A DNA stretch of 64,000 nucleotides from Stylophora pistillata (GCF_002571385.2 NW_019218423.1:1-64000), one strand, 5' to 3'; shown: positions 6,658 through 30,948, counted from the stretch's first letter. Numbers and translations are program-made. The notes: a model not told the origin generated them from the letters alone.

Positions 6658-7360
6658 GCATTTGAAAACACCTGGTCATGTTATAATGTCAATAAGGCCA
6701 CTCTTACCATTAAGTCAACAGCCTCTATTCCTTCAATGAAGTCAATGAAATAAAGGAAGGAAACTCATCTCAGGGGAGGCTCGCTCGAAGGAAACATAGG
6801 TGCAACCCTTTTTACTAATTGATGAAAATCGCTCATTGTCCGCGGTGATATTTAAACCTTTTTAATGAACAGCTAGAAACTAATTTCTAAAGATAACTAA
6901 ATAAGGGTTTTGACAAGCTATCTCTGACAGATTAAAGACATTGTCAGGGCTTCTTTTGTTGCCTCACAATAAGATTTTTGTGTAACTAAAATATTGAAGG
7001 AAGGATGGAGGGCGAAGGAATTCTTGATCATGAGAATTCCAGACAGTCTCGTTTTTCATTTTCTACATGGAAAAAGGAAAAAAAAAAACTGCAAAGCTGC
7101 GGATAGCAGTAAGGCTGTCACCGAAGAAGCAGAATTTTTTGGCTCAATTTACAGCTCTTTTTTCCTTTTGGTTTTGTTTGCAAAGCGTTTCTTAATTAAT
7201 AAGTAAACGTTTGCATTTTAATTGCAGGGGTGTTTATGTCAATTGCTATCTGCGTTTGTTAAAATTAATAATATCAAACACCAAACCCTTTTTGTCCTGT
7301 TTCGAAAACATATTTAGGAGTTCAACGTTCACCCCTTTTTTCCTCACTCGGTCTTGAGAA

Positions 7361-8978: not shown

Positions 8979-9202
8979 TATGATGATGATAGAAGATTGT
9001 TTCATGCCTATGTTAACCAACTGACTTGGGATCAGAATCCTTGAAGCACCTGCAGGTTGATTTAATTTCGTCTTTGAAAAATAAAGAGCATTGACATTGC
9101 TTGTCGCATCTTTCGACGCCTTAATTTAAATACACCCGAGGCAAACTAACTGTCAAAGAACAATGGCATATGTTTTTGCCTTTGGATAAATTTTTGCTTT
9201 TA

Positions 9203-12456: not shown

Positions 12457-15400
12457 ATGAGGATTTTGCTGTCGGTCTTGATGCTGATTGTTGCTCTTGG
12501 TGCAGCCAGTGGTGCAAGATCAAGAAAATGGAAGAGGAAACAGTTTGTATCTAACAAAAAACCATCAGGTAACAAGCCTTTCCTAATTGTCTCGTCTCAG
12601 ACCAGCACTAGAAGAAAAATAATGCAATCTTCTGAAGGAATGAACAGATTCGTTGTATGTTTCCTTCGTGACGTGAGTACAACAGTAATCGATCACATTC
12701 AATGCAGTTCGCTTGCGCAACAGAGGTACTTGAAAAAGTAAACACCGATAACTCTATCGTTTAGTGGCAGTCTTCTTTGAAAACTGCTTGAAACTGGCTG
12801 GTATTTTCGAATTCGTAATATTCTGATACGTGAGACGGACGAAAGCGTTGTTCGCTCTCAGCCACAAAGTTTTTTGAAGCAATTACGATAAAATAGAGCA
12901 CAACGGGGAAATAATCTATCGGTGAGAGGCGCAGCTGAGAAGAGTTGGTTGAAAGAAAATAACTGGACTCTACGTGGACATGGCTCCATTTTCTTTGTTG
13001 CACACGAAATATACGAGTGGGAGAAAGGAAATAAGAGGCGTTTCCGCATACGTCAGAAACAACGTGTACCTTGTTCAGGTAAGGTTCGCACAGACACCAA
13101 GTACTCATCTATTCTTTCCCCCTTCTTGGCTAAAAATTGATTCGGAACAAAAACAAAAAAAAAAGCACTCGAACAAAAACTGAAATCACTTTGTGTCGTT
13201 GCTCGATTATTTCCAATTGCAATCAATCATCACCCAGTAAAATAAGTTGGCAAAAGTCCACACTTCAAATAAAGAAGTAAATCTGAAGGACAACGCCGAA
13301 CAAACAAAATAAGCTCGCCTTCGAACCAATTTAATTTGTCCGGCGAACATGTCACCTTAAAAAACTGAAACTCTTCAATAATTTTAACCGAATCATGCAC
13401 ATCTCCTTACTCTCAGGTGATGCCAAAATTGCCTGTACGATAATTTCAACCGCATCTCACACATCCCCCTACTCTCAGGTGATGCCAAAATTGCCTGTAC
13501 GATAATTTCAACCGCATCTCACGCATCCCCATACTCTCAGGTGAAGCCAAAATTGCCTGTTGTGCTCTTTTAGGAATGATGGGAACGACGAATGCACTGA
13601 GAAGTAAAAGGCTGGAGATAGCGCGTATTGTTTGAAAATCTTGCAATCTCGTCAATAGGGAAGAGGGCGATGATAGGATCGGTGGAGGGATTGAGAAAAG
13701 TGCCTGTTTAGAAAGCACTTACGCAGCTCCGGATACTTCTCGATATTTCACCAGGGTCGAGACATAATTTATCGCGGCATCTTCATGATTTTGACATTGT
13801 TCATTGGCACGCGCTCTGCATGTGATGTTGCTCAATCTGGAAACATATGGATTTAGTTTCAAATAGGGTCATTACATATTGAATTACGTAGAAAACTGGA
13901 CTTCGAGCTCTTTGTTCTATTTGTGTTCATGAGACCCAGACATCTAAGTTGAAACAGCTGTCCAAGGTCGCATCTTGGCTGTCAGCTTGATCTTGAACTA
14001 TATAGCATTGTTTTACATGTGTTAGGTTTTCTAACGTAAGATCAGTGGTTGCTTATTATAGTTAAAAAAGCACAGAGTAAAATGGTAGGGAATGAATAGT
14101 GTGAAGATGGAGAAGTAAAAATAATGGAGAAGTTTAAAAGATGGTCGAGGAAAGAAAAAAAATGGGGATAAAGTTTTCAGGTATGAGGGCTTGATAAAAA
14201 CTCGTTTCCAGTGCTTCTCCCTCTTCCTCGCCGATTTGAGCAAGGGCGGGGCGACAAGAAGAGTGATTTTGGAAACGAGGTTGTGCTCACACCAACCCAA
14301 GTTGCGGGGAATAAGTGATAAATTCCTTTTTATCATCATTATTTCAGCCTCAACATGCTTCCTAGCGAACTGTAAGAAATGTCATAGTAATCAGTTTTCA
14401 TGTGCCGAGTGTAACCGTGGTCATGTCAGGGTCCAAGTACCTCTGGGGTATGCCTGATGGAGGCAATGTCCTCCTGGTTTTCAGAAAGTCAAAGGAACAT
14501 GTGTAGAGAAACAAGGTTAGCATGAAATTACCACTGAAAGAGAAGAACACAAGGCCATAAGTTAACTAGTAAAAAGCAGCAATGAGCATCTATTCAAATG
14601 TACCTCAAAGCGATGAGCCTACTGCGCCTTGAAACGTCGTACAGTGTTTTCTGAGGACTACTCGCCGTAAAGTCGCTTCACTTTTTTTTATGTTCTGCAT
14701 TCATTCTATTATGAGTGCCCTATCTCGTGGTCTCAGATCCCTGGATTATAAATGTAAATCATTGCTATATATTAAATAGTAATCTGATAGTTATGAAAGG
14801 CTATGGACCTTAAATGGATTTTTTCTTTTTTTTTTTATCAGATTGCCCCAAAAACTGCGAGAAATGCTCCAACAGGTTTTCTTGTTCCACATGTGACAAT
14901 GGATATGCACTATTAAAAAGATTTATTTTCTCGCGCTGCGTCCAAAAATGCCCTAGAGGATACAAGAAAGTGATGAACCGTGAAGGTGGGAGCAAGTGCG
15001 TGGAAGGTACGTTTTCAAACCTCGTGTTCCAATTCCAGCTGAAATGAGATATTTATCAAAAATTTTGGTCTTATTTTACTTTTCTTAACCTTCTCATTCC
15101 CAAGGTCTCACTAGTGGTTATTCTTACTGCGTGCCCGGCAATTCCTATGATGTCACATCTAATCGGAGACTTTGTTATTGGATCAATTAATTATCCCTTA
15201 ATTGAGATTCTTTTTCTTCGCTCTCACACTTGACTGCTTGATATTGAAGTGTTATTGTAAGGGGAAATTTTCTTTTGGTCGCTCTCGGGAGTCAAAAAAG
15301 GGTTGGAAGAGAGAGCGTCTAATATCCCTCGGCAGTGAAAGACATTTTAATTATCTCATTGTCAAACACGGTGCACACAACGCAATGTATCTATTGGTAC

Positions 15401-15811
15401 TAAACTGCAGTTATTCACAAAATAATCCATCTCATTACTGCGTTTCCCTCTCTTTAGCGTGCTCCCAAAATTGCAAGACGTGCCAAAACAAATTCTCCTG
15501 CTCCGTATGTGAAGGTGGTTATTCTCTGTTCCGAGGCTTCGCTAGTCTGGAGAGTCGCTGTCTTTCAAACTGCCCAAATGGGTATAAGAAAGAGATGAAC
15601 CCCTCAGGTGGATACAAATGTGTCAAAAGTAAGTATCTGACAGTGTCAGTCAAGCTTCCCTATCTTTCCCTCTTAGGATTATATCTATTTAGTTCTTTAC
15701 TCCATGAACTTAACACACACACACACACACACACACACTTATGATTGATTTCTATCACTCATGGTCATGGGTGTTTGTTTTTTCCGAGGGTCACACACAC
15801 ACACACGCACG

Positions 15812-15854
<43 letters not shown>

Positions 15855-18414
15855 GTGTGTAACCCTCGGAATAAAGCAAATACCCATGACCATGAGTGAT
15901 AGAAATCAATCATAATTATCATTGCGTTCAATTTCAGAGTGTACATCAAATTGCAATAAATGCCGAACCAGATTTTCCTGCGCTGTATGTGAAGATGGAT
16001 ATTCACTTTTTAGCTTGCGGATGATTAATCGTTGTGTAAAGAAGTGTCCAAAGGGTTACAAACCTGAGGGGAGCCTTACAAGCGGACTTAGATGTACTAA
16101 AGGTGGGTACATTGTTCAGTTCTGTAAAGGATAATAATCCTGGTAGGTCGCTAATCGTGTGGTAGAGCGTCCTGTAAATGCAAACTGGAATTTATTCTTT
16201 TCCTATAAGTGTGGGTGAAGGAATCGTTACGTCATGGGACTGCAATTAAGCCAGAAGTTTCGGCCAATGGAAGTGCTAGAGGAGTTGACAAATATTCACC
16301 GAAGTGGCGGTAGATACCACTTGCTAGTCACTTCCGAACTAGCCAATCAGCGCGTGCGAAAAGTACTATTATTCACCTCTACATTTGTGGTAGTCTTGGT
16401 ATTCTTATTAACATTATCATCATCTTTATTACTATCATTATTTTTATAGTTATTCTTATTCTAGTTTAGAATATCACCTTTGATGGAAGTAGGTAGACTA
16501 ACACGAGGCTAATGAATCTATATAAAGGGGGTAAGTTTCTAAAAAAACTGAGATGATGCGTCAGTGGGGGAGTACAATAAGGTTCGTTACGGAGCGCATG
16601 GCGAATTGATCATTCGCTCTGACGAAGGGCTAACGCTCGAAACGTCAGCTATGAAACTCTTTATGGTGGCTAATTTACTTTATCGACTCAGTTGATGAAC
16701 TTGAAAATTAAAATGAGGCTAAATTGGAACTGCAGTTACTCTTTCACTCAGTATTTGCCGCAGTCCTCTTTCACCGGTTTGGGATTTCGATCACAAGTCA
16801 TTGTTTGTGATATTTGAGAACGTTGACTCTCAGTCAGGAAGAATAGCATACATCTTAAAAAGCTTCTTTCCGTTATTTCACTCGTTTCATGCTTCAATCT
16901 TTTATCTTCTTTCTTCTCTTTTCGGCTAAGTAGAGTGTCAAGTACCGAACTGTGGATCCTGTCCCAAACGATGGGGAGTGTTTCAACGACCCAACAGATG
17001 TGAAAGATGCAAGCCTGGCTACTACAAATTAACAGCTGGTAATAAACCGTGGCAGCAGCACGACTTTTGCTTCTCTCACTGCCCCTCCGGTTACATGAAA
17101 AGTGACAAGAAGGGTGTTCCTGAATGCGTGAAAGGTGTGTGAAGCAAACGGGCTAACATTATTACGTAAGGCGATATGCCACACTCAGTAGTTGGAAATA
17201 TTACCTAAATAGGATCAGTGATAGGGAACAAGACAGAACAACTTGTAGGCTGCTTCACGAGATTATAATCTGCAATTCACCCCAAAGCTGCCTCTTACCT
17301 CTTTTGAGTATCACAGCAGTTCTATTCTATTTGAGTATCACAGCAGTTCTATTCTTCAGTGTCTTAGCAAGGAGCACAATGAGCGAAACATAGTGAAGGT
17401 GAAATCGATCAAGTCCCCATCATAACGAGTCTAGAGGCGTCTAAATGATACACATTCTCCCAGAGCATTCTTAGATCGGTCAGAATTTTTCAGTTGAGTG
17501 AGTCCGTTGTTTACCCATTTGGTCCATGAGGCCCGATAATTAACAAGCACTTTAGCTAACTTTCCAAGTGCTGGCCTTTGGTTACCTTTTAATTCATAGT
17601 AGGTGTGGCTATAAAAACAGAGGCCCCCACTGAGCCAACAACTGAAGAGCCAACAACTGAAGCGCCAACAACTGAAGAGCCAACAACTGAAGCGCCAACA
17701 ACTGAAGAGCCAACAACTGAAGCGCCAACAACTGAAGAGCCAACAACTGAAGCGCCAACAACTGAAGAGCCAACAACTGAAGCGCCAACAACTGAAGAGC
17801 CAACAACTGAAGCGCCAACAACTGAAGAGCCAACAACTGAAGCGCCAACAACTGAAGAGCCAACAACTGAAGCGCCAACAACTGAAGAGCCAACAACTGA
17901 AGCGCCAACAACTGAAGAGCCAACAACTGAAGCGCCAACAACTGAAGAGCCAACAACTGAAGCGCCAACAACTGAAGAGCCAACAACTGAAGCGCCAACA
18001 ACTGAAGAGCCAACAACTGAAGCGCCAACAACTGAAGAGCCAACAACTGAAGCGCCAACAACTGAAGAGCCAACAACTGAAGCGCCAACAACTGAAGAGC
18101 CAACAACTGAAGCGCCAACAACTGAAGAGCCAACAACTGAAGCGCCAACAACTGAAGAGCCAACAACTGAAGCGCCAACAACTGAAGAGCCAACAACTGA
18201 AGCGCCAACAACTGAAGAGCCAACTACTGAGGAGCCAACAACTGAAGAGCCCACCACCATGTCTAACTCGTGGACTACCCCAGACACATTCAGTACCCCT
18301 GGACCCACTTCCGCTGAGCTGACTACGACCGAGCTCTTCACGACTGAATCTTTCACTACTACCGAACCAACCGATACACCTGAACCAGGCATTTTCATAG
18401 ACTTTTGGCCTTAA
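12457..18414 (+). CDS. Gene A: secreted furin-like (FU) Cys-rich repeat protein with acidic mucin-like tail (~599 codons; in-frame TGA in exon 2)
   Basis: Exons 12457-12568, 14348-14515, 14842-15006, 15458-15628, 15938-16102, 16931(or 16934)-17134, 17600(or 17603)-18414; all introns GT-AG, phase 1. Signal peptide MRILLSVLMLIVALGAASG, basic RSRKWKRK, five C-x3-C-x2-C..C-x2-C..C-x3-CP-x-G[YF]..C repeats, (TTEEPTTEAP)n tail. TATAAAA at 12373, AATAAA at 18601. TGA at 14455-14457. Confidence 0.85.
13379..13560. repeat. Tandem repeat, 62-bp unit, ~2.9 copies
   Basis: ACTCTCAGGTGA(T/A)GCCAAAATTGCCTGT recurs at 13409, 13471 and 13533, in intron 1 of gene A. Confidence 0.9.
15712..15915. repeat. ~53-bp inverted repeat interleaved with (CA)n microsatellites
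   Basis: 15739-15791 is the near-perfect reverse complement of 15861-15915; (CA)n tracts at 15713-15738 and 15792-15850. Confidence 0.85.
16610..16654 (+). ncRNA. Minimal type I hammerhead ribozyme motif (Penelope-like element repeat)
   Basis: TCAT-TC-GCT CTGACGA A GGGC TAAC GCTC GAAA CG TC/ AGC-T-ATGA: intact core CUGACGA/GAAA/UC, helix II with tetraloop, palindromic ACGT helix III, helix I pairing. Confidence 0.75.
17632..18258 (+). repeat. Coding minisatellite, 30-bp unit (15-bp subunit) encoding TEEPTTEAPT
   Basis: 19 identical copies of ACTGAAGAGCCAACAACTGAAGCGCCAACA at 17641-18210 plus degenerate flanking units. Confidence 0.97.
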
Positions 18415-21376
18415 GTTTCCTTTTATCCAGTTGCGATTACCTCATGTTTTTACTTCTGAAAGACAACTTTAAGTGAACATAGCTAACATGTAAGCGATTT
18501 TTTGGGCTTGATTTTTATAGTTATTGTGTGTGCTTAGTTTTTGTTTGTATTGAAGAGATTTCGGATTTTATATCTACAGTATGGGAAGACAATACGGTTA
18601 AATAAAAAATAAGTGTGGATTCACCACTAGATTAAAAATTAAGGTCATGAGAATAAAGAATTAAAGAACTCTTGACTTAAACGAAGTTCTCGTCAGTACA
18701 TATGGAACGTATACAGACGGCATGTACAACATGCATACAGATGTAAGGGTGTAAAAATGGGTATAATGAATCTAACGCTCGAGAGGATTTTAGCTGGTTT
18801 GATGCAAAATTAAAACAGATAATATTTCTAGTAAAGATATGGAATCCGTGGTCCTCTGGGTTACAGCAAGTTATATCCCAACCACCCCCCCTCCCCCCCT
18901 CTCTCATTTTCTGCCGGATATATATTTTCATTTTCTATCAGACTACCACGTCTTGGTATGTGTGGTATAATTGTTTTTGAAAGGTCAAATTTTGCAATAT
19001 ACAGGTAATAAGTGAGGGCACAGTTTATCCAGTTCTATCCTCTTCACAAACTGTCATTCCCAAAATCATCAAACGGGCCTATACATTGCACTGGCCATCT
19101 TTTTTCAGACCGGCTAATTTTCTACTGACCCAGTACCAGGCTAGGCTTGATGACCAGCCACTGTTCGAGAACCTGAGCCCGCGGGGAGAAACGAAAAAGA
19201 CCGGACTCGAGAGGGTGACAGAAAGGCGTTCAGTTGTACCGTTGCACTTATGTCCCCTTATTGTAGCTATGTTCCCTGACGTAATGTGATACAGTGGCCA
19301 ATCATACCCTGCGATCTATCCAGCTAAACGCGGCTTGGGACTGGTTAGGAGACTCCGTTGTAGTTGTCTTCAAGCAAAAGTACTTATTCAAGGGGGTCGG
19401 GATAAGTGGAAAATTTTCCTGTATTTTCTCGTACCAACGGATGAACAAGCTTCTGCTAAAGTCAGGAAAACTTGCTATCCGCATTTCATCGCGAACCAGA
19501 TCACTGGGCTCTCGCACACACATTACTTCACGGACTCCTTGTATGGCTTTGGCGGTCACGTCGCATTATCGCCTTCAAATTACCAACCCTAACCATAAGC
19601 ATTATCGCGCCTTAAGTATTTCGCTCCATTTCACTGACTCAATGGCTGGAAAAGACTAATTTTCTACCTTAAAATACCGGAGCCCACTACATTACCGCAG
19701 GGTACGTATTTATTTACTTTGAATTAATTTCATAATAAATGTCAAACAAAATTTTCAAAGTAAGGCTGTGATCTTTTTCTCTGTAAGCTATCTTTAATGA
19801 CAGAAACAGAACCTTCTCGAAACGAGTCTACCTTCAAATCGTAAGACAAAGTCTTAAAATCTTTCAATAGTGCTCACATTGTCTCAAATTGAAAAGGGGG
19901 TGAGGGCAGACACTTTGGTAGTCTGGCAATTTGATCCTAAAAAAGTGTAGTATGTGTAAAGGAAGTCTAAACCTGTTAAATGCGTTCTAAAAACAACTGC
20001 TAATCGATTTTCATTCAAGAATGTACTGAGCAACCCTGTGGATGGAGAACGAGTGGGGCTTTTCAAATAATTCAAAAGATCCTTTCATTACTGTACTGAT
20101 ATAAAATATCTGAGTTTTTAATTTCTGCTTAAGAGGTTTATCCGGTGCTTTTCCACAGGAAATATGTCAACCCTTGTTGATACATTAGACTTTTGTCACC
20201 TTTATTACGCATCAACCATTTTTATCACTGGAAACAACATGCATGCGTCGATGAAAGTTTGAAGTTGTTTATGAAGCCCAAAGTATAACTTGTTACATGA
20301 CCTTGGCTATAGTAATGTACGGTTTATATGACGATGCATAAAAGCTAAAATGGCTTCGAGTTGACATCAAGACTTAATTCCTTGCTGAGTTGTTTTGTCC
20401 CATGTTGTTCGAAACAAAAGAAGGAGTTTTTATAAACCAGTCCAAAAGGTTCAAGCGGGTAACACTGTCACTTTTGCTTTCACCTTGTTGTTTTCTTTTC
20501 TTTCTTTTTTCCTCCTTACGACATTCTCCAATTCAGGATTGACGTGTAAATTTGCGAGTTTTGCAGCTTCGCCCTAGCTCAGATCCAGCTGATTTTCATT
20601 TCATCAACGTCTATGATGAAAATCTATCTTTGATTGATTAGGCGCCAGACATTAGCTATTTGTGAACAGACTAAAGACGTCACACAACAATGACGTAAAC
20701 AGCGGGCACGTGATCACCCTCCAAGATAAGCCAGAAGCACGTGGCTAAAACGGAAATGACTGAATCAGGGGTAATGAGTAGTCACTGAGGAATGTGTTGA
20801 TGTGCAAATTTAACGATGATTAAAAAAAAAGTCGACAGATGAGGTGTTAGGTGAACAACACCCACGGCATTGGACAAAAATAACTGTTCTTGTTCGTTTT
20901 CCTTTAATTAGGCATGCGTCCTCACAGCTTCAACCTCAGTAAGCTGCATTAAGATTTCCAAGTTCAGAAGGTAGTTTAGTTGAGTCCGGAAATCGCAACA
21001 AATCAAACAGTTCATCAGTCTAGTTTGGGATGATTTCTGGGATGTCCTGAAAGTTTCAGCACTTCAAGTGTTTCATGCCAAAACATGAGAAGCGTCAAAC
21101 AGGTTTTAAAATCTGAAAATGATTACCCACTCATCAGGGAAAAACTGCCAAATCGTGTTTATTGAGATACTAATGGGCATAGGAAACTTTGACCTTCAGC
21201 TTGATACCAGACTGATAATAACCATAACAGGTATGACAGCAGCTTTCCTTTTGTATTGTTCTCTGAAACAAAGCCGGTTTGTCTGTACAGGTTTGGTGGG
21301 TCAAGGCAGCGAAATTCCGAAGACAAACCAGAATCATCAGGAGTTTGGAGCGTTTAGAGGCTTTCATCGTATCGTC

Positions 21377-24300
21377 ATGAAGAAGACGTTTTTGGTTCTG
21401 TTAGGCATCGCCATCGTTCTTCTTGCTACAGCCGAGGGTAGGAGAGGTCGAAAGCGAGGAGGAAAAGGTAAAGGAGGCTTTTCTCGGCCAAACAAAAAAG
21501 GTGAGACCTATAAATCAAAACTTGGAATAACCCTCATTACGCCAATTAGAAAAGGAAGATTAAGGATACTCAACCTCTGTCAATGTAACGTTTGTAAATT
21601 TTATCCTGAGCTAGTTTTTTGTCTTTAGGTTTTGTAAGCCTACGCTACAGCAGCAATATTGCGTTTCCGTCCTACAGGGTTCGCGCATTAGGAATCTGTC
21701 TATAATTCTTGAGGATATTTATTTGCCTGATTCGGATATTGACCTTTCTATGCTTTCTTTGTGAATTTCATCTACCGAAAGGGCAAAGCCTTGCCTCAGA
21801 GTCTTGGTCTGAAATTAGAAATAACAGCCGATACGTGATAGGTTTCAGATTTACGGTCAGCTGAGGCGTTTAGCCACGCAGACAGCGAAAAGAATAGGAT
21901 ATTGAAATTACTTTCCCTTTGGGCTGAAGCGGAATCTCATGAAACAAAAGCTGATATAATTTGCTGTACATATTCGCTTGTATTAAGGAATGCTGCTAGA
22001 GAAAGTGAGAGAAAATCAAATTGCTGAATGAAATGAACGTTCTGATTTTTTTTAATCCAGCTTGATGCCCTATTTTAGGATTGAAACTTGAGCAGAGCCA
22101 TCTTTAATCTTGATGTTGCAGCGTCTAGTAACAACCTTACATCCGACGTTCTTTTATGGGTTTCTCCATTTCTTTAAGTCGGTTGTGTTGCGCGTGTTCT
22201 TTCTCGGGCAATTAATATAAGCACATCTCAAAAATTTCCACGATTCTCAATCAAATGTAGGGACCATGGATGATCAGCAATTGTACAACGTGATGCGCTC
22301 ATAACACGTACTTCATTATAATGCGCCAGTGAGAAGATTCAGACAATGGGGCCATTATCTATATATCTGGTGTTGAGGTCCGTTTCATTGTCCAAGTTAT
22401 TATTTTCATTAGTTAATTTTCATAGGTGCACCCCATTCGTTTATTTCGTCTTCTAACTTGTGGACGGTTTGTGTTATCTTATACTCAACTAGCCTGTACC
22501 AAAAACTGCAATATTTGTGACCGAGAAGGAACCTGCCTCGAGTGCGATGACGGATTCGCTAAAGTCACTTTCCCGAAACGATCTAAGACAGTCTGTGTTC
22601 CTTGCAGCAAACGAGGAAAAAAGACTGCTCTGAATGGAGACATGTCCAAGTGCCCTCCAGGTGAGCAAGTTTGTTTCAAGTAGTCAGCAGCTTTGTGCGG
22701 TCAAAGATTTAAAAAAGGGGCTAGCTGTGAAATGATCGAAGAACAATCGTCCCCATTACTCTTGTAGCCTCCCAAGCGGCGCCTTTTGGACTTGCAAGGA
22801 ATACATGAAGAAACTAACGAGAAAAACAAGAAGGCCGCCTTAGCTTATGCAGCCACATGTGTTTGTTATTATGGTTATTATCATCGTTTCTGGGTGAGGA
22901 TACCCAGAGTTTTTATTGGCAGTTTGCTGTCATTACACCGCTGCTCAATAGATGGGCGTCAGTGGCCGTGCGAAAGGATCTAGCAGAGATCACCTCTGAT
23001 CCTTTCTCCTTCGTAGTGGCCCTTTTGCGCTACACCCCATAGAACTAATGCAAAGGAGACCACTCTGACCACGGGTTTTGACGCAGTTTTTCGTGTCTCT
23101 ATTTATTGCTCTCCACCCTTGATTCCTTTTTTTTTTCCACAGAGAAGAACAAAAAGGGACTGCTCGTATTTCACCATTCCTAAGCGTCTTGACCCTGACC
23201 TTCATAGAAAAAGTCAGAGAAGTGTATACTGATTGTGTTTTTCAACTTTTAGTAACTACGACAGATCCTTCGCTGAGCTGTCCGCAAAAGTGCTCCAGCT
23301 GCAAGAATGGAGCGTGCCTTGTTTGCGAAAGTGGTTTCGCTTTAGTCACTGGACGTAAGAATAAAACAGCTTGTATTTCCTGCGCTACTGGGAGAAATGG
23401 TAAAAGGATAGACAAATCACAATGTGGCTCAGGTAATTCCTTGTTGTACAATTGTGTGCATGATAGTGTTTTATTGTTCAGTTCTGTCAAGAGGGCCATG
23501 AGGGCTCTGCGCAACTCTGAGATGGTGCCTAACTCCGGAAATATTGAACATTTTCATTCCCAAGATCGGATTGTTAATTCTCCCCTTAAGCTGCTACACA
23601 TTTCCTTGTAAATTAGTGACGAGAATTTGGTATTGGATCAAGATAACATCTTGGATAATTAGGTATAATTTCTCATTACATGCTTGGTGGGTAATGTATG
23701 AATTTTATTTGGAGAATTTATTTGTTAGTCACTTCTGGGAGTAAAAGGATTAATTGCTTGTCACTTTTCAATCTTTTTTCAGAAAGTTGTGGGAAAAACT
23801 GTCTAACATGCACAAACGGAACCTGTACAGAATGCGCAAACGGTTTTCAACTGAACCAAGACAAGAATATGTGCAAAAAGATAAAAGGCAAGTTTAACGT
23901 AACTGTTCGCATTGAGTACTTGTACTCCTTGAAATGTACTGAATCCTTCACGATGTAACCTGTTTCTGTCTCATCAAATTTTCAGTTTTACTCAGATCCT
24001 GTTTTTATTAGCTTGAGTTATCTTAACTCAGTATAAATAAAAAGAATAAATGATTAATTTGAGGAACAAAGAGAATAAAATTGTGAGAAACACCTACATA
24101 AAGTAGACCGCTGGGGAAAGGAACTAATTACTAGGGGAATGACTTCAAAATAAATATTTAACAGAATGGATACATGTTCAGGGGCGTAGCCAGGATTTTT
24201 CAAAGGGGGGATCACAGAGGCTACTCACCAGATTGTCATGTCGACCTCCCCGCCGTGCATGTTTTACTTAATGTTACAGTTTTGGGATGAGTAGTGAGAG

Positions 24301-25775
24301 TAAAGTGGACAGGCCAAGATATTGTGATGACGTTTTCACCACCTGAATATTGTAGGTTGTTTGCTTAAAAGAAGGCCTACCAAGGTGGGGTCACGGGCAC
24401 CCCAGGCCCCCCCCCCCTGGTTACGCCCTTGATGTTACATTCAGACCTTTTACCTTAAGTATTTCAAGATTTCCTTATCGATCTCTTCCATCTTTACCTT
24501 TCAGGGCGTAAAATTGCGCCTAATACAGGCGCCAATGCGACTAAATTTTTAACTTTGGCGACCAAATCCTGAAAATTAGTCGCCAAATTGGCGACTAGAA
24601 TTTCTAATCACACCTTACCTAGAGATCTAATGATTGTTGAAAATTTGTAAAGATAAATCTGCAGCAAAGTTCCTCGTTAAGCTCGTTTCCAAAGCGCAGC
24701 ACATGCACGATGTCGAACGTAAATCTTCCGTCACTAGACGCCATCTTGAATTTAGGTAACCCATAAAGTTGTATATAATCCATTCTAGTGTCCTCTTTGT
24801 AGCTAGTGCGAATTTAGCGGGCTCGTTTTTGATGTTTGTATGACTGTATCACTATGATATGATAAATCTAGTACAGTGACAGGGTAAAAAACTTTTTTTG
24901 TGTGAGTGTGTCATAATGGGCACCAACTTTTTGGAATTGGCTACCACTTTAAAATATTTAGGAGCCAAGTGGCTACCGGAAAAAGGTGAATTTTACGCCC
25001 TACCTTTATTATTTGTTTACAGATTGTGGAAAGGGCTGTAAGACATGCGTATCAGGAGTTTGCTCCGGTTGCAACGAGGGCCTCGTTCTCGGCCGTAAAT
25101 CAAGAAGATGTGTGAAAGCTTGTTCAAGAGCAGACCCCAACTATAAATCGCAAGCCTGTGAAGGAAAACGTAACGAAAAAGGACGAAAAAAGAAGCGAAA
25201 AGGCAAGTTGATTTCATTAAATTATAAGGAAGTTATAAAAAACACGTTTACGCTTGCTCAATGCAACCCTTCCCATACCTTTTTTTTTTTACCCCTTCCC
25301 CATTTTGTTAGCTTCAATCCCTTATTGTATACCACATCTCCTGGGTTTGACGTAAATATTTTATGAACGATCGCGAACATGTCGTTTAGTTTGAGTGCAA
25401 GCCCTCTTAATTGGTCGGTGGGATTCTGTAACATTTAAAAAATAAATAGATAAAAGGCAATTCTTGAAAGGTAGCTCAACATTCTCTACCGATCACAAAG
25501 TTGCTTACTATTCGAAGTTTTCAACAGGTTTCAGGTCCAATTTTGAGTCAGGTGTTTTAACACATTGAAACTCAACGAAGTTGTGTGTAAATGACGTACA
25601 ACAATCAATATTCACCTGTTTATAATCTGATTTCCTTTGTTCATGTAACTTTGTGAGTCTTGGGCTTAAAGCAAACACTGAGTGGTATTTTCTTCTCTGA
25701 TAAACAGGAGGCAAAGGAAAACCAAAGCGAAAGAGACGACCGAACCCAACACAGCCCACTGCAGAGCCACACTAA
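21377..25775 (+). CDS. Gene B: secreted furin-like Cys-rich repeat protein with polybasic N- and C-terminal segments (~274 aa)
   Basis: Exons 21377-21500, 22493-22660, 23253-23432, 23783-23887, 25023-25202, 25708-25775; all phase 1; donors of introns 4 and 5 are AG/GCAAGT. Signal MKKTFLVLLGIAIVLLATAEG, RRGRKRGGKGK, four Cys repeats (third has 6 Cys), tail KGRKKKRKGGKGKPKRKRRP. AATAAA at 26322 and 26334. Confidence 0.85.
24179..24431. mobile_element. MITE with CAGGGG TIRs and 5-bp TSD (ATGTT)
   Basis: atgtt-CAGGGGCGTAGCCAGG...CCTGGTTACGCCCTTG-atgtt. Confidence 0.85.
24502..25002. mobile_element. MITE with CAGGG TIRs and 5-bp TSD (CCTTT)
   Basis: ccttt-CAGGGCGTAAAATT...AATTTTACGCCCTA-ccttt. 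Confidence 0.82.
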
Positions 25776-27218
25776 TATATCCTCACCCCAAATTGCGTGT
25801 GTTCAAACGCTCGCGAAGTGAAAATCTTGTTTTTACCAATTTAATTCCTTCTGTAGTGTATTATCGGATTTGTAATGGTCGGGCGTTTCCATCTGTTTTT
25901 ATCTTATTCCCCCAGGATAGTCCAAGAAAATTCGTAAATAGCAAAATCAACCAATTGTTCCTGGCATTTTATTTTTCTGCATTACTGTTTCTCCCGGCTT
26001 TAACCTTGGCAAAATCCTGTCCACATGCTACCCTATATTATGTTTACGAACATGTAATCAAGGATCAAAACTTACAAACATTAGACACTATGTGACGGGG
26101 GTTGCATTCAAGCGTTTGAACACAAAATTTGGTAATTTGTTCAATTTTGTCTTTTTCACTTTTTTTTTTTTTTGTGTAACTTTGTAGAATTTTATGCCGA
26201 GTGCTTGACACATCTCGTTTTAGTATGAATTGAATATAGAACTGGCGATGATATAGAGAGTTCATCGAAACTGTACAAAGTGTGAGTACAGTTAGGGCCG
26301 TGTCAAATATTTTGTTCTTTTAATAAAGCTGTTAATAAAGTAACCATGGTTTGGTTGTATTACTTTTCGCAAATGGTGGGAAATTCGCTCGTGTTGAAAT
26401 CCGGTACATCCTAGCAATTCTAATGGGTGTCCATTTAAAGTGATGACCCTTATTTAGTTTAGAGACTCACAAGATTGCGCCATGTAGGGACAATGACTCT
26501 TTTTTAGACCATCAGGATAACTTTAACCTCCCATGTGTGCATCCTTTCTCATTTTAACTGAAAGCAAACAAGCACTAAACTGTAACAAAAAATGGCGTAC
26601 AAATATCTGAATTAGCTTTAAGGTCATCACAATAGTCCGTAGTACATTGTAGATCTGCCTCATGAGCAAAACTCCTCACGAATTGATTTCAATTTGGTTT
26701 TTTTTTGTAAGGAAAATTAGAAACAAATAGCCATTTGCAAAATGGAAAGTGAGAGAACAGAAAACATAACTACGCCACAACGAAATAATTACGTGATACA
26801 AAGTATTTCGTGTTGCGTGAAAAGTGAAATATATGTGTTTCAAAATGGCTGGTTTCAGATTCCATCATCAGACGCCCATTTACCTGTGGAAAGTGCTTCA
26901 GTCCTCAAGTCAGATAGCTCTCATTTTTAACCGTTTAAATCGGCACCTTTCAAGGACATGCCGCACCCCTCCCCTCATGATTCACTCCAACAACCATCAA
27001 TTACAAAGTTGAAGAGCAAGTACGTGTCCAAAAACTGAGTGTTAACGCGAGGTTCAGCAAACACGGAAGAAATCTTCGGCTTCCATAAAAAAATGCGCGC
27101 AAATGCAAACCGTGTTACAGTGTTGGTATCTTAATGACATCATTGTAATGCGACTGCTTTCAATTTCATGAAAGGAGTGTTATTGCCAGTTGACAAGTGC
27201 AATGTAAGAAAGACAATA

Positions 27219-27461
27219 CAGTCAAACCTGTATATATGAAGAGGTCACCTACGGGGAATGGCGAGTAGAGATTATTCTTAGTTTTATTTGATTTGCTTTG
27301 ATTTAGTTCCGTTTAAGGGACTGCTATATATACAGGTGGATGACGAAATAAACAAGGTGACCACGACCGCTTACCATGAGAAACACTTTGTAAGGGGAAA
27401 AAAATTCGGAATAAAACAGAATGAATACTTAATAAGGTGCCACTTAAGACAGGTTCGCCTG
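27219..27461. mobile_element. Tc1/mariner-type MITE, TA TSD
   Basis: ta-CAGTCAAACCTGT...ACAGGTTCGCCTG-ta. Confidence 0.7.
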
Positions 27462-27991
27462 TATTACGATTTATCAGTGGAGTAATGCTACTTAAAGTTT
27501 TTGACCAACCGTTGCTTGACCAGTCAAAAAGTGTCAATCATGTTAAGTGCTGTATTTTGTGTTTTTTTTTCGAGTTGTACTTGCTTGCCTGATGACATTC
27601 TCAGAAGAATCATTTCTACAAGTTCAGGAAACGATGGAACCGTGACAAATGTGATCATACATCTGATAATTAGATTATATCCTTCGAAGTTTCTATGACG
27701 GAAATAATGCTGCGAAAACGTGTATGCTTTTACGAGGGCGTTCAAATCTTGTATGACATCACCGAAGGAAATTTCGCAAGAGGCACGTATCAAAGAAGAG
27801 ATATTAAACCTGCCGTTTTCCGGACGTGATATGGCAAGAGCCAATAGACATGTGCGAGTTCTATTGTTTCTGGATAATTCGCGTATAAACGATCTCAAAT
27901 AACACGACAACATAAAAAGGGATACCATTCCGAGCAGAAGCATATTAGATCTCCCCGCTTTCTTGGTCGTAACTTCAGCGAACGCATAATT

Positions 27992-30948
27992 ATGAAGGGC
28001 GTTATGGTGGCTTTCTTGCTGTTCGCCGCGGTACTCCTTTTCGTTACGGTTGATTCCAAAAGGGGCGGAAAAGGGGGTTCAAGACGGAAGAACGGGATAA
28101 GATCGGGCACGAAAGGTTAGTTTGAAATCCAACTAAAAATTTCTTTTATGTAACGAGTGAGTATTTTGTTGCATATTGCGTAATTAGAATTATAAAAATC
28201 CTTATTCAATCAAAGGTGATTTTCCTTGTTCTTATTCATATTTTACAGAATTAACATGTCCCAGAAACTGTTCAGACTGCGAGGAGGGTGTATGTCTAGA
28301 GTGCGACGACGGTTTTGCGCTGAAAATGTTGCGCAACAACAGAACAGGATGTATACCGTGTGGCCGACGTCTAAAAATGAAGGATCCTGATTTATACCTC
28401 CAACAATGCAGCACCAGTACGTTTAAAATTAAGTCATTCATAGCCAAAGTCTGAGCATTCTACATGTAAAACTCAACCGTTAAACTTTCTTTGAAAGATT
28501 CGTCAGCCCAACAATATACTTATATCTCATCAAACACCCTTTATATATCTTGCTTCAAAAAAAGCCTCGACCATAACATGCACGTCACAAAGACTTATTT
28601 ACAACGGTATAATTCTTTACACTTGTCTGATAATTTACTTTGATAAGTCGATCACTTTATTGTACATCCCGGGAATATGTCGCTTTAATATTTTCCTCCA
28701 TTTGTTGTTATTTACTCAGATTGTACCAGAAACTGTTCAGTTTGGGATAAAGGGAACAACCAAATGTGCAATCCTGGATTCTTCAAAGTTCAAACGAGAA
28801 TCTTAAAAAGAACGGTCTGTGTTCCTTGCGGTCGTCTAATGAAAAGAGTTTGGCCAGACGTTTTCGTGAGGGAATGCACAGAGTCCGGTGAGTAGGTCAT
28901 TTAAATCAAACGAGGTCATAGTCCAATGCGACCCTCACAAGCCTCTTTTTTTCCCCTTATGACCTGACTGGGTTTACGCGTGTTCTATGGTGCATACGTA
29001 TAGACGCAAGAGGTGAAAGTTTTGCCCACTGACCAGATATTCGATTTTTCTTGGCAAATCTTGGCCATTTAGCTCGGTGCAAGCTGTTGAAACCATGAAA
29101 AGCTAATAAGGAAACAAAAGCATACGATTGCTTTTTGAAATGATTGTTTTGCGCCGAGCTAACCTACCAGTTGAACTTAAAATCTTGGCTTTAAAGCAAA
29201 GGAAAAATGCAGTAAAGGGCCTAAACAAATATGGATTACATAGGAATGGAGCGTAAGGTATGGGTCGCACTTGGGCAAAGTTTTCAACTTTGCCGGCAAA
29301 AAAAAACACAGAAAATTTGAAACCGCAACCGGAAAGCAAACTTTTGGTTTTAACTATCAGGGTCGCACTAGGTGAAAAAAATGTCAGTGATGACACTTTG
29401 ATAAACCAGACACACGTTTATCGACGTGCTATGGGGAGAGAGCAGTGAGCTGAAAAAGGAAAACAAACGTTAAAAAAATGCGTCCCGTTGAAGCATTGTT
29501 AATAACGATCACGGTGATGCTTATTCTTCTTATTCAGTTAAATCACGAGCACTTTTTTGTCTTTCGTATGATCTATGAAAGATGGGTTAACGCCTGTTTA
29601 ACTCGAAGATACTAGCTTATCCCTTAGCTGCTTCAAATTCGAGATTAAATAAAGTATATGTATGTATGTATGTATCGACGTCAGCGAAGATTACTTCGAG
29701 CGCCATATGCCTGATCAGTTCCGTGACCAGTCGAGTTGTTTGCTGTTTACTGACAGGTGATGACAGTTACCGCTGTGATAGCTATTGTTTAGTCCGAGTT
29801 TTCCGAAATCTACCTGCCCCACCCAAGCACTACGGCGTCTTTGATATTTTGGCCGGTTTTCAAAGTTTTTTTTCGAACTGGAGTTAGGGTCGCATTAGGC
29901 AATGTGCCCCGATGACAGATTTTTACGCCAAAGTGACCACATTCACACCAAACTTTGCCAAGTGCAACCCATGCCTAAATTGACGAACCTGGGCAGACGA
30001 GTGAGGTGTGCTATATTTTAACACTGTAGGTTGTGGACGAGGATGTGCTAACTGCACCTCCCCAGGCCTCTGCACCGAATGTGAAAGAGATCAAAAGCTT
30101 TTTACACCACCAGGCAGTAACATCACAAAATGCGTAAGGAGATGTCCGCCATTCTACAAGCTGAAGAAAGGCGTGTCTCCTCCTAAATGCGAATTCCAGC
30201 AAAAAGGAGGAAAACCAAACAGACCAAACAGCAGTAAGTGACTGTTTCAATATTGATTTGAGTAAAGAATTTAATTATAGAGATGTGCTCGCTAGATTTG
30301 TAAATCAATATGAATATCAGCCCTATTCGACGGTACTGCGAAGAAATGCCAAAACATTTGCGTACACTCGACTGACAGTAAGCCAAATTTTCCTTCAAAT
30401 ATGCACATTAATTCCAAGCTTTTTCTCTTTTAGAGTGTGTTAGAGGCTGCGAGCAATGTACACTGGAGGGAGTTTGTAAGAAGTGCTTTGTAGAGTTGCA
30501 ATTGTTAAAACTACGCGATCGCACAATTTGTACCAGAAGATGTCCATCAACTTTGAGAACATATTTCGACCCAGAAACCAACACTAAGATCTGCAGGAAA
30601 CCGCGCCGTGGCAAAAAAGGTAACGGAGCAAAATGATAGTAACAGCTTTCTCTTTTTCTTTTTAATATAAGAAAAGTATTGATTGAAATACGAAAAATAG
30701 GTAGATTTTTAACCCATTTCTATACAAGCATCATTCCGTAGACGACGCAACTAGTTCGCTCGGATCCAGTTTTAAAACTGACATAGAAAGTATTTGAAAA
30801 CTTCTCTTTTACGATCTATCTTACACTTCGATTTGTTTTGTTAATTTGAATGAATTTTCCAGTATTAAGGCTATATGCCAAGCATTTTTCCTGTTCTTTT
30901 ACTTTATTCATAGGAGGAAGAAAAAATCTATCACAGTCTGACAGTTAA
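27992..30948 (+). CDS. Gene C: secreted furin-like Cys-rich repeat protein with basic termini (~294 aa)
   Basis: Exons 27992-28115, 28249-28416, 28720-28887, 30030-30233, 30434-30619, 30914-30948; all GT-AG phase 1 with continuous frame. Signal MKGVMVAFLLFAAVLLFVTVDS, KRGGKGGSRRK, four Cys repeats, tail RKPRRGKKGGRK. AATAAA at 31211. Most exons are missed by the ORF track. Confidence 0.85.
29257..29975. mobile_element. PIF/Harbinger-type non-autonomous element, TAA TSD
   Basis: taa-GGTATGGGTCGCACTTGGGCAAAGTTT...AAACTTTGCCAAGTGCAACCCATGCC-taa; contains a short AATAAA(GTAT)n LINE-like tail at ~29648-29676. Confidence 0.82.

What the first reader, a model, noticed from the sequence alone, without database searches (positions are those of the whole stretch)
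12457..30948. Tandem family of three secreted 'R-spondin-architecture' furin-repeat proteins with swapped charged tails
Seen: three co-oriented genes each encode signal peptide + Arg/Lys-rich segment (exon 1), one FU-type Cys repeat per symmetric phase-1 exon, then a low-complexity tail. Exon 2 is 168 nt in all three and exon 1 CDS is 124 nt in B and C, showing paralogy despite strong divergence. Established: R-spondins (Wnt potentiators acting via ZNRF3/RNF43, LGR4-6 and heparan sulfate) are signal + basic segment, FU1, FU2, TSP1, basic tail, one domain per exon, and are described mainly from deuterostomes. Inference: these TSP1-less 4-5 FU proteins may be an undescribed family of glycosaminoglycan-binding extracellular ligands (possibly R-spondin-like Wnt modulators) or matrix/mucus proteins, diversified by exon duplication and tail swapping. 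No protease domain is present, so a PCSK5-like label would mislead.
Basis: partly seen in the sequence, partly recalled or inferred. Interest (0 to 1): 0.85.

Follow-up and report, generated by a model that had tools for sequence, protein, structure and literature searches.

The report
Coral secreted R-spondin-type repeat proteins
Three neighbouring coral genes make small, secreted, strongly positively charged proteins built from the same cysteine-rich module that R-spondins use; they are real and expressed, but they are an uncharacterised coral family and not R-spondins.

Summary
The window is from Stylophora pistillata. It carries three co-oriented genes. A is 12457-18414, B is 21377-25775 and C is 27992-30948. 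Each has a signal peptide plus a Lys/Arg/Gly segment in exon 1, one furin-type (FU) repeat per symmetric phase-1 exon, and a low-complexity tail.

All B and C exons, and A exons 3-6, match public proteins residue for residue. RNA joints confirm all six A junctions.

One correction: A's 168-nt exon 2 is a dying exon. It has an in-frame TGA at a Cys codon, other individuals carry 1-nt insertions, and most transcripts skip it in frame.

The repeats are R-spondin type. A 12-exon profile and both protein-level PDB searches hit R-spondin-1/2 first, with no EGFR or PCSK chain listed. A confident single-repeat model superposes on RSPO FU1 (Z 8.5) against HER2 (Z 4.3). The coral's true PCSK5-type repeats prefer EGFR.

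The proteins are not R-spondins. They have no TSP1 domain, 3.5-6 repeats, and the LGR Phe clamp and most ZNRF3 contacts are not kept.

Orthologues were found only in robust-clade corals, with dN/dS about 0.26 and exon and gene gain and loss.

Most likely role: polycationic (+33 to +41) extracellular glycan-binding proteins, with A as a mucin-tailed variant.

No paper was found. The scan earlier reported a related six-repeat gene elsewhere in this genome (s1-775563).

The parts
12457..12568 (+). Gene A exon 1: start codon, signal peptide and Lys/Arg-rich segment (112 nt, donor GT)
   Evidence: Sequence. Matches P0001 residues 1-37. RNA joints 12568->14842 and 12568->14348.
14348..14515 (+). Gene A exon 2: 168-nt FU exon, now a decaying exon. 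It has an in-frame TGA at 14454-14456 at a Cys position. Other individuals carry +1 nt at 14375/14376. It is skipped in frame in most transcripts.
   Evidence: Sequence. Orthologue P0057 has 'YACWKKCP' where the window reads 'YA*WRQCP'. Joints and insertions. No SECIS element in Rfam. The same exon is riddled with deletions in Pocillopora.
14842..15006 (+). Gene A exon 3: FU repeat (8 Cys)
   Evidence: AlphaFold model pLDDT 90.5. It superposes on RSPO1/2 FU1 with Z 7.8-8.5.
15458..15628 (+). Gene A exon 4: FU repeat
15938..16102 (+). Gene A exon 5: FU repeat
16934..17134 (+). Gene A exon 6: longer, divergent FU repeat
17600..18414 (+). Gene A exon 7: acidic Thr/Glu/Pro tail ending in the stop codon at 18412-18414. 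It holds 20.6 copies of a 30-nt unit at 17634-18251. The acceptor is a tandem pair at 17600/17603.
   Evidence: Tandem repeat with 99% matches. RNA joint 17134->17603. NCBI isoform X3 uses 17600. Tail net charge -72, pI 4.05.
21377..21500 (+). Gene B exon 1: signal peptide and basic segment (124 nt)
   Evidence: Transcript-derived 274-aa forms and the Pocillopora and Oculina orthologues start at this Met.
22493..22660 (+). Gene B exon 2: FU repeat (168 nt; second half of the CxxC type)
23253..23432 (+). Gene B exon 3: FU repeat (180 nt)
23783..23887 (+). Gene B exon 4: half FU repeat (105 nt) with a GC donor
   Evidence: The junction 'KKIK-D-CG' is present in P0012 and P0002.
25023..25202 (+). 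Gene B exon 5: FU repeat and start of the Lys/Arg tail (180 nt) with a GC donor
25708..25775 (+). Gene B exon 6: basic tail and stop codon
27992..28115 (+). Gene C exon 1: signal peptide and basic segment (124 nt)
28249..28416 (+). Gene C exon 2: FU repeat (168 nt)
28720..28887 (+). Gene C exon 3: FU repeat with two cysteines lost in S. pistillata (168 nt)
   Evidence: The cysteines are intact in the Pocillopora, Oculina and Orbicella orthologues.
30030..30233 (+). Gene C exon 4: canonical FU repeat (204 nt)
   Evidence: Aligns to RSPO FU1 in the profile search.
30434..30619 (+). Gene C exon 5: FU repeat and start of the basic tail (186 nt)
   Evidence: Aligns to RSPO FU2 in the profile search.
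30914..30948 (+). Gene C exon 6: short basic tail and stop codon. It is homologous to B exon 6; both begin Gly-Gly-Lys/Arg.

Best explanation
These genes form a tandem cluster A-B-C encoding small secreted proteins. So far the family is seen only in robust-clade stony corals.

Each mature protein starts with a disordered Gly/Lys/Arg segment. A rod of 3.5-6 disulfide-locked FU modules follows. Each module is three beta-hairpins with 8 Cys, of the R-spondin FU1 type.

The FU rods are strongly cationic, with net charge +33 to +41 and pI about 9.5. B and C end in short Lys/Arg tails. A ends in a long acidic Thr/Glu/Pro array that is probably O-glycosylated.

Inferred mechanism: after secretion the proteins dock by charge onto sulfated or acidic glycans such as heparan-sulfate proteoglycans, mucus or mesoglea. 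The rigid FU rod then offers protein-binding surfaces. A would be a mucus or glycocalyx component whose cationic head can bind anionic polymers, including its own kind of tail.

Shown here: gene structures, splicing, expression, paralogy, synteny, purifying selection, fold type, and charge computed from sequence. Inferred from sequence only: secretion. Inferred: glycan binding and any partner.
For: - Gene models are verified exon by exon against NCBI and transcript-derived proteins and by RNA joints.
- Each starts with a hydrophobic signal-like N-terminus followed by a basic segment.
- A single-repeat AlphaFold model has pLDDT 90.5 and three hairpins.
- Its best structural matches are RSPO1/2 FU1, with Z 7.8-8.5 and rmsd 1.9-2.3 A over 52-53 of 54 residues. 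The next match is HER2 at Z 4.3. Foldseek ranks 1-31 are all R-spondin.
- Sequence profiles hit R-spondin first.
- Charges are given and are conserved in the orthologues.
- dN/dS against Pocillopora is 0.26 (B) and 0.27 (C), which indicates functional proteins.
- The cluster order is conserved in Pocillopora verrucosa (A-B-C), Oculina (B-C) and Orbicella (A-C).
- Pfam finds no protease, TSP1, VWD, TM or other domain.
Against: - No binding or localisation data exist.
- The full-length B model is of low confidence (pLDDT 61).
- Charge alone does not prove glycan binding.
- Cell-type expression could not be retrieved.
- Searches for relatives were limited by the tools, so absence outside robust corals is not shown.
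Confidence: 0.6

Rival explanations
1. They are functional R-spondin analogues. One FU repeat binds the coral ZNRF3/RNF43 ectodomain, the basic segments bind heparan sulfate, and together they clear the ligase and potentiate Wnt signalling without TSP1 or LGR.
For: - The repeats have the RSPO FU1 fold and sequence type.
- The proteins have basic N- and C-terminal segments.
- The coral genome encodes a ZNRF3-type ectodomain (PF18212; three exons at 44, 34 and 28 bits).
- The first of those exons is closely similar to vertebrate ZNRF3 (E 3e-15). By my count on the alignment to human chain residues 98-143, it keeps Gln100, His102 and Lys125, but not Glu127.
- A survey of 430 species found no R-spondin in Cnidaria (PMC12111769). 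Any ligand of the coral ZNRF3 is therefore unknown.
Against: - The LGR Phe clamp (F106/F110) is not conserved in any repeat.
- In the best alignment of A to RSPO2, the ZNRF3-contact hairpin is three residues shorter. By my position count, only the Ser48 and Arg66 equivalents match, and the Asn51 and Gln71 equivalents do not.
- Pfam's R-spondin model is passed only by S. pistillata A. B, C and the A orthologue P0057 do not pass it.
- Orthologues are seen only in robust corals, at 49-59% identity between coral families. A is a pseudogene in Pocillopora, and B is not seen between A and C in the Orbicella locus.
- dN/dS of 0.26 is moderate constraint.
Confidence: 0.1
2. They are structural components of mucus, mesoglea or the skeletal organic matrix with no signalling or adaptor role. 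A would be a true mucin.
For: - A has a 20-copy Thr/Glu/Pro array of the kind typical of mucin domains.
- RNA contigs over the A exons have high depth in one run.
- Tandem duplication and repeat-number change are common in matrix proteins.
Against: - None of the three is in the S. pistillata skeletal proteome table.
- There are no VWD, C8, TIL or CTCK polymerising domains.
- B and C are small (about 250 aa mature) and have no repetitive tail.
- Contig depth is not a measure of expression.
Confidence: 0.15
3. They are cationic host-defence or interaction proteins, either antimicrobial or active towards symbionts or microbes. They would act by binding anionic microbial surfaces.
For: - High positive charge on a disulfide-rich scaffold.
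- A lineage-restricted tandem cluster with gene and exon birth and death and moderate constraint.
Against: - At 250 aa or more they are much larger than typical antimicrobial peptides.
- There is no evidence of induction by microbes.
- dN/dS is well below 1 overall.
Confidence: 0.1
4. They are not separate genes but exons of a larger known gene such as a PCSK5-type convertase, or annotation artefacts.
For: NCBI names B and C 'PCSK5-like'.
Against: - Each gene has its own start codon, signal peptide and stop codon in self-contained transcript contigs of about 1.2-2 kb.
- Pfam finds no Peptidase_S8 or P domain.
- The coral's true PCSK5-type cysteine-rich domain lies on another contig and has a different repeat type.
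Confidence: 0.02

Closest known systems
R-spondins (RSPO1-4), FU1-FU2 module (Pfam PF15913 Furin-like_2)
   Same: - Secreted proteins with a signal peptide followed by a basic stretch.
- FU repeats share the cysteine spacing and three-hairpin fold. The match to RSPO1 FU1 has Z 8.5 and rmsd 1.9 A over 53 residues.
- Sequence profiles hit R-spondin first, and the two protein-level searches hit nothing else significant.
- Each repeat sits on one phase-1 exon.
- B and C have a basic C-terminal tail.
   Different: - 3.5-6 repeats instead of two, and no TSP1 domain.
- No Phe clamp, and a shorter ZNRF3-contact hairpin.
- The repeats match FU1 and FU2 about equally, so there is no one-to-one orthology.
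- Only A passes the Pfam threshold.
- The family is restricted to corals, whereas R-spondins are reported absent from Cnidaria.
The six-repeat R-spondin-type secreted protein reported earlier in this genome (scan finding s1-775563). It is possibly the multi-exon FU gene on contig C308 (L015), but that link was not verified.
   Same: Same species. It is a small secreted protein with one RSPO-type FU repeat per exon, and it was also judged not to be a proto-R-spondin. The FU exons seen in L015 are of the same type.
   Different: It is only a distant relative. An A orthologue hits one C308 exon at E 1e-3, and the B/C profile hits nothing outside this window. It lies on a different contig and is not part of this cluster.
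Cysteine-rich domain of PCSK5/PACE4-type proprotein convertases (source of the NCBI names)
   Same: Tandem FU-like cysteine-rich repeats.
   Different: - No protease or P domain.
- The coral's own PCSK5-type repeats (contig C235) sit many to an exon and end in a membrane anchor.
- They hit EGFR, LET-23 and ErbB4 first (E 3e-8) and Pfam GF_recep_IV (74 bits).
- The window's repeats hit none of these.
Gel-forming and membrane mucins (NCBI name 'mucin-2-like' for A)
   Same: A has a tandem Thr/Pro-rich array that is likely O-glycosylated.
   Different: - No VWD, C8, TIL, CTCK, SEA or TM domains.
- The array is Glu-rich and very recent, with 99% identical units.
- The orthologue P0057 has only a short non-repetitive Thr/Pro/Glu tail.

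Membership tests
R-spondin | Secreted protein with an N-terminal signal peptide | tested here: met
   Hydrophobic N-termini followed by small residues were judged by inspection, with no signal-peptide predictor. Pfam finds no other domain, and no later hydrophobic stretch is visible in the printed sequences.
R-spondin | FU repeats of the R-spondin type (Pfam PF15913; FU1/FU2 fold) | tested here: met
   A scores 33.7-36.8 bits against a cut-off of 28. B and C are invisible to Pfam, but their profile hits only RSPO1/2 in the PDB. The 12-exon profile gives E 5e-6 to RSPO2. The fold match has Z 8.5 against 4.3 for HER2. The number of repeats is 3.5-6, not two.
R-spondin | Thrombospondin type 1 (TSP1) domain after the FU repeats | tested here: not met
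   No TSP_1 hit at E <= 0.1 in P0012, P0045, P0019 or the orthologues. All exons are accounted for.
R-spondin | Basic C-terminal tail | tested here: inconclusive
   B (+12 over 37 aa) and C (+7 over 20 aa) have one. A has an acidic tail of net charge -72.
R-spondin | ZNRF3/RNF43-contact residues in FU1 (RSPO1 Ser48, Asn51, Arg66, Gln71; PMC3937510) | tested here: not met
   In the HMMER alignment of A to RSPO2, my position count matches only the Ser and Arg equivalents. The contact hairpin is three residues shorter. The B/C consensus matches none clearly.
R-spondin | LGR4-6 Phe clamp in FU2 (RSPO1 Phe106, Phe110) | tested here: not met
   By my reading, the aligned positions are Gln/Thr in A exon 4 and Thr/Val in the profile consensus.
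R-spondin | Potentiation of Wnt/beta-catenin signalling | not testable with these tools
   This needs reporter or embryo assays.
Proprotein convertase PCSK5/PACE4 | Subtilisin-like catalytic domain and P domain | tested here: not met
   Pfam finds no Peptidase_S8 or P_proprotein domain in P0012, P0045 or P0019.
Proprotein convertase PCSK5/PACE4 | Cysteine-rich repeats of the PCSK/EGFR (GF_recep_IV / Furin-like) type | tested here: not met
   The control is the coral's own PCSK5-type domain. It hits GF_recep_IV (74 bits), Furin-like (38 bits), and EGFR and LET-23 in the PDB. The window's proteins hit none of these.
Gel-forming mucins (MUC2 type) | VWD-C8-TIL assemblies and a C-terminal cystine knot flanking PTS repeats | tested here: not met
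   A has only a Thr/Glu/Pro array. A low-complexity Extensin_1 match falls below its cut-off, and there are no VWD, C8, TIL or CTCK hits.
Giardia variant-specific surface proteins (name given to the Pocillopora orthologue) | VSP domain (PF03302) with a C-terminal membrane anchor | tested here: not met
   PF03302 scores 12-14 bits against a cut-off of 31.4. No hydrophobic C-terminal stretch is visible in the printed sequences.
Selenoprotein (reading of the TGA in A exon 2) | In-frame UGA kept by relatives, plus a SECIS element | tested here: not met
   No Rfam SECIS between 12000 and 31500. The orthologue has Cys at that position. Other individuals have frameshifting insertions in the same exon, and the exon is mostly skipped. 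The exon is degraded in Pocillopora.

The most novel reading that the evidence does not exclude
One or more of these TSP1-less multi-FU proteins, or their distant paralogue elsewhere in the genome, may be the missing FU-type ligand of the cnidarian ZNRF3/RNF43 ectodomain. That ectodomain is present in this coral, and by my count it keeps three of the four R-spondin-contact residues. The protein would act as a heparan-sulfate-dependent, LGR-independent Wnt potentiator in a phylum reported to lack R-spondins.
Probability: 0.08. Interest if true: 0.85.

Novelty: new variant of a known kind. Interest (0 to 1): 0.45.

Why it matters
R-spondin-type FU modules are known almost only from R-spondins. 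A 430-species survey reported no R-spondin in cnidarians.

This work shows that stony corals use the same module in a different architecture: polycationic rods of 3.5-6 repeats, with or without a mucin tail. The genes form a dynamic tandem cluster, and public annotation mislabels them as convertase, mucin or Giardia antigen.

The result corrects those labels. It gives coral biologists a defined secreted family to place in cell atlases and in mucus or matrix proteomes. It also gives Wnt evolution researchers concrete candidates to test against the conserved coral ZNRF3 ectodomain.

The dying exon 2 of gene A is a clear example of how symmetric phase-1 exons allow a repeat protein to shed a broken module without losing its reading frame.

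Tried and rejected
- Single FU exons against Pfam gave only sub-threshold hits. This was uninformative until full-length public proteins were found.
- I did not use a single FU exon as the query for the 1.84-billion-protein search, because giant repeat proteins would swamp the list. A profile of the three exon-1 peptides worked instead.
- Selenocysteine reading of the TGA in A exon 2: rejected.
- 'Exons of a larger PCSK5 gene': rejected.
- Skeletal matrix protein: no support. None of the three is in the S. pistillata skeletal proteome table, and nothing relevant is in the Acropora skeletal proteome paper.
- Literature searches by accession, locus tag, UniProt id, product name and SRA run found nothing.
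- The held cell-atlas supplements do not contain the accessions, and the atlas text has no relevant mention.
- The full-length AlphaFold model of B was too uncertain (pLDDT 61) for structural conclusions. The single-repeat model was used instead.
- Rfam found nothing in the region, so the very high-depth element in A intron 5 is not a known RNA.
- A complex prediction with the coral ZNRF3 ectodomain was not sent. That domain is split over several exons, no public protein id for it could be fetched, and I do not claim binding.
Models were checked exon by exon against public proteins.
- The N run at 3542-4412 was left untouched.

Full report
**What the window is.** Earlier notes of this scan name the genome as the stony coral Stylophora pistillata. 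The NCBI names attached to the proteins encoded here confirm that. The window is contig C638 of the assembly. An N run at 3542-4412 was left untouched.

**Checking the observation.**
- A three-frame scan shows a series of cysteine-rich open segments on the + strand between 12.4 and 31 kb.
- I placed splice sites by eye. I then looked for independent gene models.
- Spliced models were to be searched exon by exon, so I never built or searched a joined sequence.
- I aligned the three exon-1 peptides by reference. A local test showed that this profile would still recognise each of them.
- I searched the profile against 1.84 billion proteins. This returned two full-length proteins (P0001 and P0002) and several exon-1 fragments from other corals.
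- Word-based searches and cluster look-ups with these ids gave the public records:
  - Gene A is 'mucin-2-like' (XP_022806370.1, isoform X3).
  - Gene B is 'proprotein convertase subtilisin/kexin type 5-like' (XP_022806374-76; PFX15533.1).
  - Gene C is also 'PCSK5-like' (XP_022806372/73; PFX15532.1).
  - The Pocillopora orthologue of B is called 'major surface trophozoite antigen 11-like'.
- A script then compared each window exon with these proteins without joining anything.
  - Every B and C exon matches with zero mismatches.
  - Every split codon gives the residue found in the protein.
  - All internal coding exons are phase 1-1.
  - B exons 4 and 5 use GC donors.
- Exon 2 is 168 nt in all three genes.

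**RNA evidence for gene A.** One read-laying run was allowed, and I spent it on 12300-17700.
- Contigs from three RNA runs give these joints: 12568->14842, 15006->15458, 15628->15938, 16102->16934 and 17134->17603.
- Minor joints are 12568->14348 and 14515->14842.
- So exon 2 is usually skipped: contig depth 5097 against 0 in X1, and 215 against 13 in X2. In X10 the two forms have similar depth (14 against 21). Contig depth is only a rough guide.
- This fits the sequence. Exon 2 has an in-frame TGA at 14454-14456. At that position an A orthologue from another coral (P0057) has a cysteine: 'YACWKKCP' against 'YA*WRQCP'.
- Other individuals carry a one-base insertion at 14375/14376. This includes a likely DNA run, X17.
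- Rfam finds no SECIS element.
- In Pocillopora verrucosa the same exon has several deletions.
- Exon 2 is therefore a dying exon that is dropped in frame, not a selenocysteine site.
- P0001, a transcript-derived protein, joins exon 1 directly to exon 3. NCBI isoform X3 also lacks exon 2.

**Are the three genes related, and are they separate?**
- B and C and their orthologues align colinearly over all six exons at about 35% identity. This includes the last exon, which begins Gly-Gly-Lys/Arg in both.
- An A orthologue aligns to the B/C profile from the first methionine with hhalign probability 99.1% and E 8e-19.
- Each gene has its own start, signal-like N-terminus and stop in self-contained transcript contigs.
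- In the whole S. pistillata assembly the B/C profile finds only the B and C exons.
- The A orthologue finds only the A exons plus one weak exon on contig C308. That exon belongs to a multi-exon FU gene. It may be the six-repeat gene reported earlier by this scan (s1-775563), but I did not verify the link.

**What kind of repeat is it?**
- Pfam recognises only S. pistillata A, and only with the R-spondin FU model PF15913 (33.7-36.8 bits against a cut-off of 28). B, C and the orthologues have no Pfam hit.
- Against all PDB sequences:
  - A hits only R-spondin-2 at a significant E-value (E 5e-4).
  - The B/C profile hits only R-spondin-1/2 (11 of 11 rows).
  - A profile of the 12 single-repeat exons hits R-spondin-2/1 first (E 5e-6). 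It matches both FU1 and FU2. The only other rows are zinc-finger proteins and one weak unrelated hit, which are not FU proteins, and no EGFR, insulin-receptor or convertase chain is listed.
- As a control I took the coral's own PCSK5-type cysteine-rich domain from contig C235. It prefers LET-23, EGFR and ErbB4 (E 3e-8) and Pfam GF_recep_IV (74 bits). R-spondin scores only E 7e-3. The preference of the window's repeats for R-spondin is therefore specific and not a database artefact.
- Structure agrees.
  - The full-length model of B is poor (pLDDT 61), though its best Foldseek hits are all R-spondin.
  - A single repeat (A exon 3, using the 12-repeat alignment) folds with pLDDT 90.5 into three beta-hairpins.
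  - Foldseek ranks 1-31 for this model are R-spondin-1/2 (TM 0.60-0.80, rmsd 2-3 A). HER2 follows at about TM 0.5.
  - An exhaustive aligner gives RSPO1 and RSPO2 residues 39/40-95/96, which I take to be FU1 from recalled domain boundaries. These score Z 7.8-8.5 with rmsd 1.9-2.3 A over 52-53 of 54 residues. HER2 is next at Z 4.3.

**Why they are not R-spondins.**
- No TSP1 domain exists in any of the proteins, and all exons are accounted for.
- There are 3.5 (B), 4 (C) or 4-5 (A; 6 in P0057) repeats, not two.
- A review lists the residues that make R-spondin work: Ser48, Asn51, Arg66 and Gln71 for ZNRF3/RNF43, and Phe106 and Phe110 for LGR4-6 (PMC3937510).
- In the alignments the Phe clamp is absent.
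- The ZNRF3-contact hairpin of A is three residues shorter than in RSPO2. By my position count only the Ser and Arg equivalents match.
- The repeats match FU1 and FU2 about equally, so there is no one-to-one orthology.

**Distribution and evolution.**
- Orthologues were found in Pocillopora damicornis, P. verrucosa, P. meandrina, Oculina patagonica and Orbicella faveolata. Others came from unnamed coral transcriptomes.
- I recall the named species as all robust-clade stony corals. This was not checked with the taxonomy tool.
- The search tools could not reach far enough to say whether complex-clade corals or sea anemones have the family.
- The cluster is syntenic:
  - P. verrucosa has A-B-C in the same order and orientation.
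  - Oculina has B followed by C.
  - Orbicella has an A-type gene followed by C and then a cytochrome P450 gene. The window also carries P450 exons downstream.
- The family is dynamic.
  - In P. verrucosa, gene A is a pseudogene, with frameshifts and a Cys-to-Trp change.
  - In Pocillopora, C has a tandem duplication of exons 2-3, giving a 405-aa protein.
  - B exon 4 is a half repeat.
  - C exon 3 has lost two cysteines in Stylophora only.
  - The 30-nt tail array of A, with 20.6 copies at 99% identity, is a recent expansion. P0057 has only a short Thr/Pro/Glu tail ending in a similar 'LWP' motif.
- Between Stylophora and Pocillopora, dN/dS is 0.26 for B and 0.27 for C, summed exon by exon. 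This indicates purifying selection of moderate strength.

**Likely mechanism.**
- The mature proteins are strikingly cationic. B is +41 (pI 9.75), C is +33, and the FU head of A is +35.
- The orthologues have similar values (+25 to +38).
- The tail of A is -72 (pI 4.05) and is 58% Thr+Ser+Pro.
- With a signal peptide, no visible anchor and a rigid disulfide rod, the most economical reading is extracellular proteins that dock by charge onto sulfated or acidic glycans and present FU surfaces to partners.
- A would be a mucin-tailed variant. This mechanism is inference. No binding or localisation data were available.
- None of the three is in the S. pistillata skeletal proteome table.
- No paper mentions the accessions or names.

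**The reading that keeps it interesting.**
- A survey of 430 species found no R-spondin in Cnidaria (PMC12111769).
- Yet this coral has a ZNRF3-type ectodomain gene.
- Its first ectodomain exon is closely similar to vertebrate ZNRF3 (E 3e-15). The alignment runs to residues 98-143 of the full-length human chain. Counting along it, Gln100, His102 and Lys125 are kept and Glu127 is Leu.
- An unknown FU-type ligand is therefore conceivable, and these genes and their distant paralogue are candidates.
- I rate this at about 8-10%. The ligand-side residues are not kept, and the family looks young and unstable.
- I did not send a complex prediction. The ectodomain is split across exons, no public protein id for it could be fetched, and I do not claim binding.

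**Verdict.** It is unsupported for a Wnt role. This is a new variant of a known kind: R-spondin-type FU modules used in a coral-restricted polycationic secreted family. It is of moderate interest.

Noticed in passing
window 16463-16824 (intron 5 of gene A): This stretch has enormous contig depth in all four runs, up to about 1.5 million in the DNA-like run, with many loose ends at 16609-16652. It looks like a very high-copy interspersed repeat. Rfam has no match to it.
   Followed up: partly
window 14348-14515: This is a symmetric phase-1 exon caught in the act of dying. The reference carries a nonsense codon, other individuals carry different 1-nt insertions, and a minority of transcripts still include it. 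Those transcripts should be targets of nonsense-mediated decay.
   Followed up: yes
window 23888-23889 and 25203-25204: Two GC-AG introns in gene B share the same donor context (AAAAG|GCAAGT). Both are confirmed by NCBI and transcript-derived proteins.
   Followed up: yes
window 17600/17603: A tandem acceptor (catag|tag|) precedes the tail exon of gene A. The RNA contig uses 17603 and NCBI isoform X3 uses 17600, so the two forms differ by one residue.
   Followed up: partly
window 8454-9020 (-): An open frame encodes the first half of a rhodopsin-family GPCR (Pfam 7tm_1, E 1.6e-22) upstream of the cluster on the opposite strand.
   Followed up: partly
window 38220-38636 (-) and 50654-51136 (+): Two cytochrome P450 exons (Pfam p450, E 1e-46 and 2e-51) lie downstream of the cluster. 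A P450 gene also follows the C orthologue in Orbicella faveolata (L027), so the synteny extends beyond the FU genes.
   Followed up: partly
window 15713-15915 (intron 4 of gene A): AC and CA microsatellites flank sequences that read alike on both strands. This may be a small inverted-repeat element.
   Followed up: no
L026 (Pocillopora verrucosa) 3589-7100 and 16093-19499: In P. verrucosa the gene A orthologue is a pseudogene with frameshifts and a lost cysteine. Gene C there has a tandem duplication of exons 2-3 and encodes a 405-aa protein with six repeats.
   Followed up: partly
G000 contig C185, about 118.5-121.2 kb (L018-L020): This is a coral ZNRF3/RNF43-type ectodomain gene. By my count on the alignment to the human chain, three of the four R-spondin-contact residues of human ZNRF3 (Gln100, His102, Lys125) are conserved, in a phylum reported to lack R-spondins.
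   Followed up: partly
window 21263-21376: NCBI isoforms of gene B start 38 codons upstream of the conserved Met, in an open 5' leader. That start would bury the signal peptide. Transcript-derived proteins and all orthologues start at 21377.
   Followed up: partly
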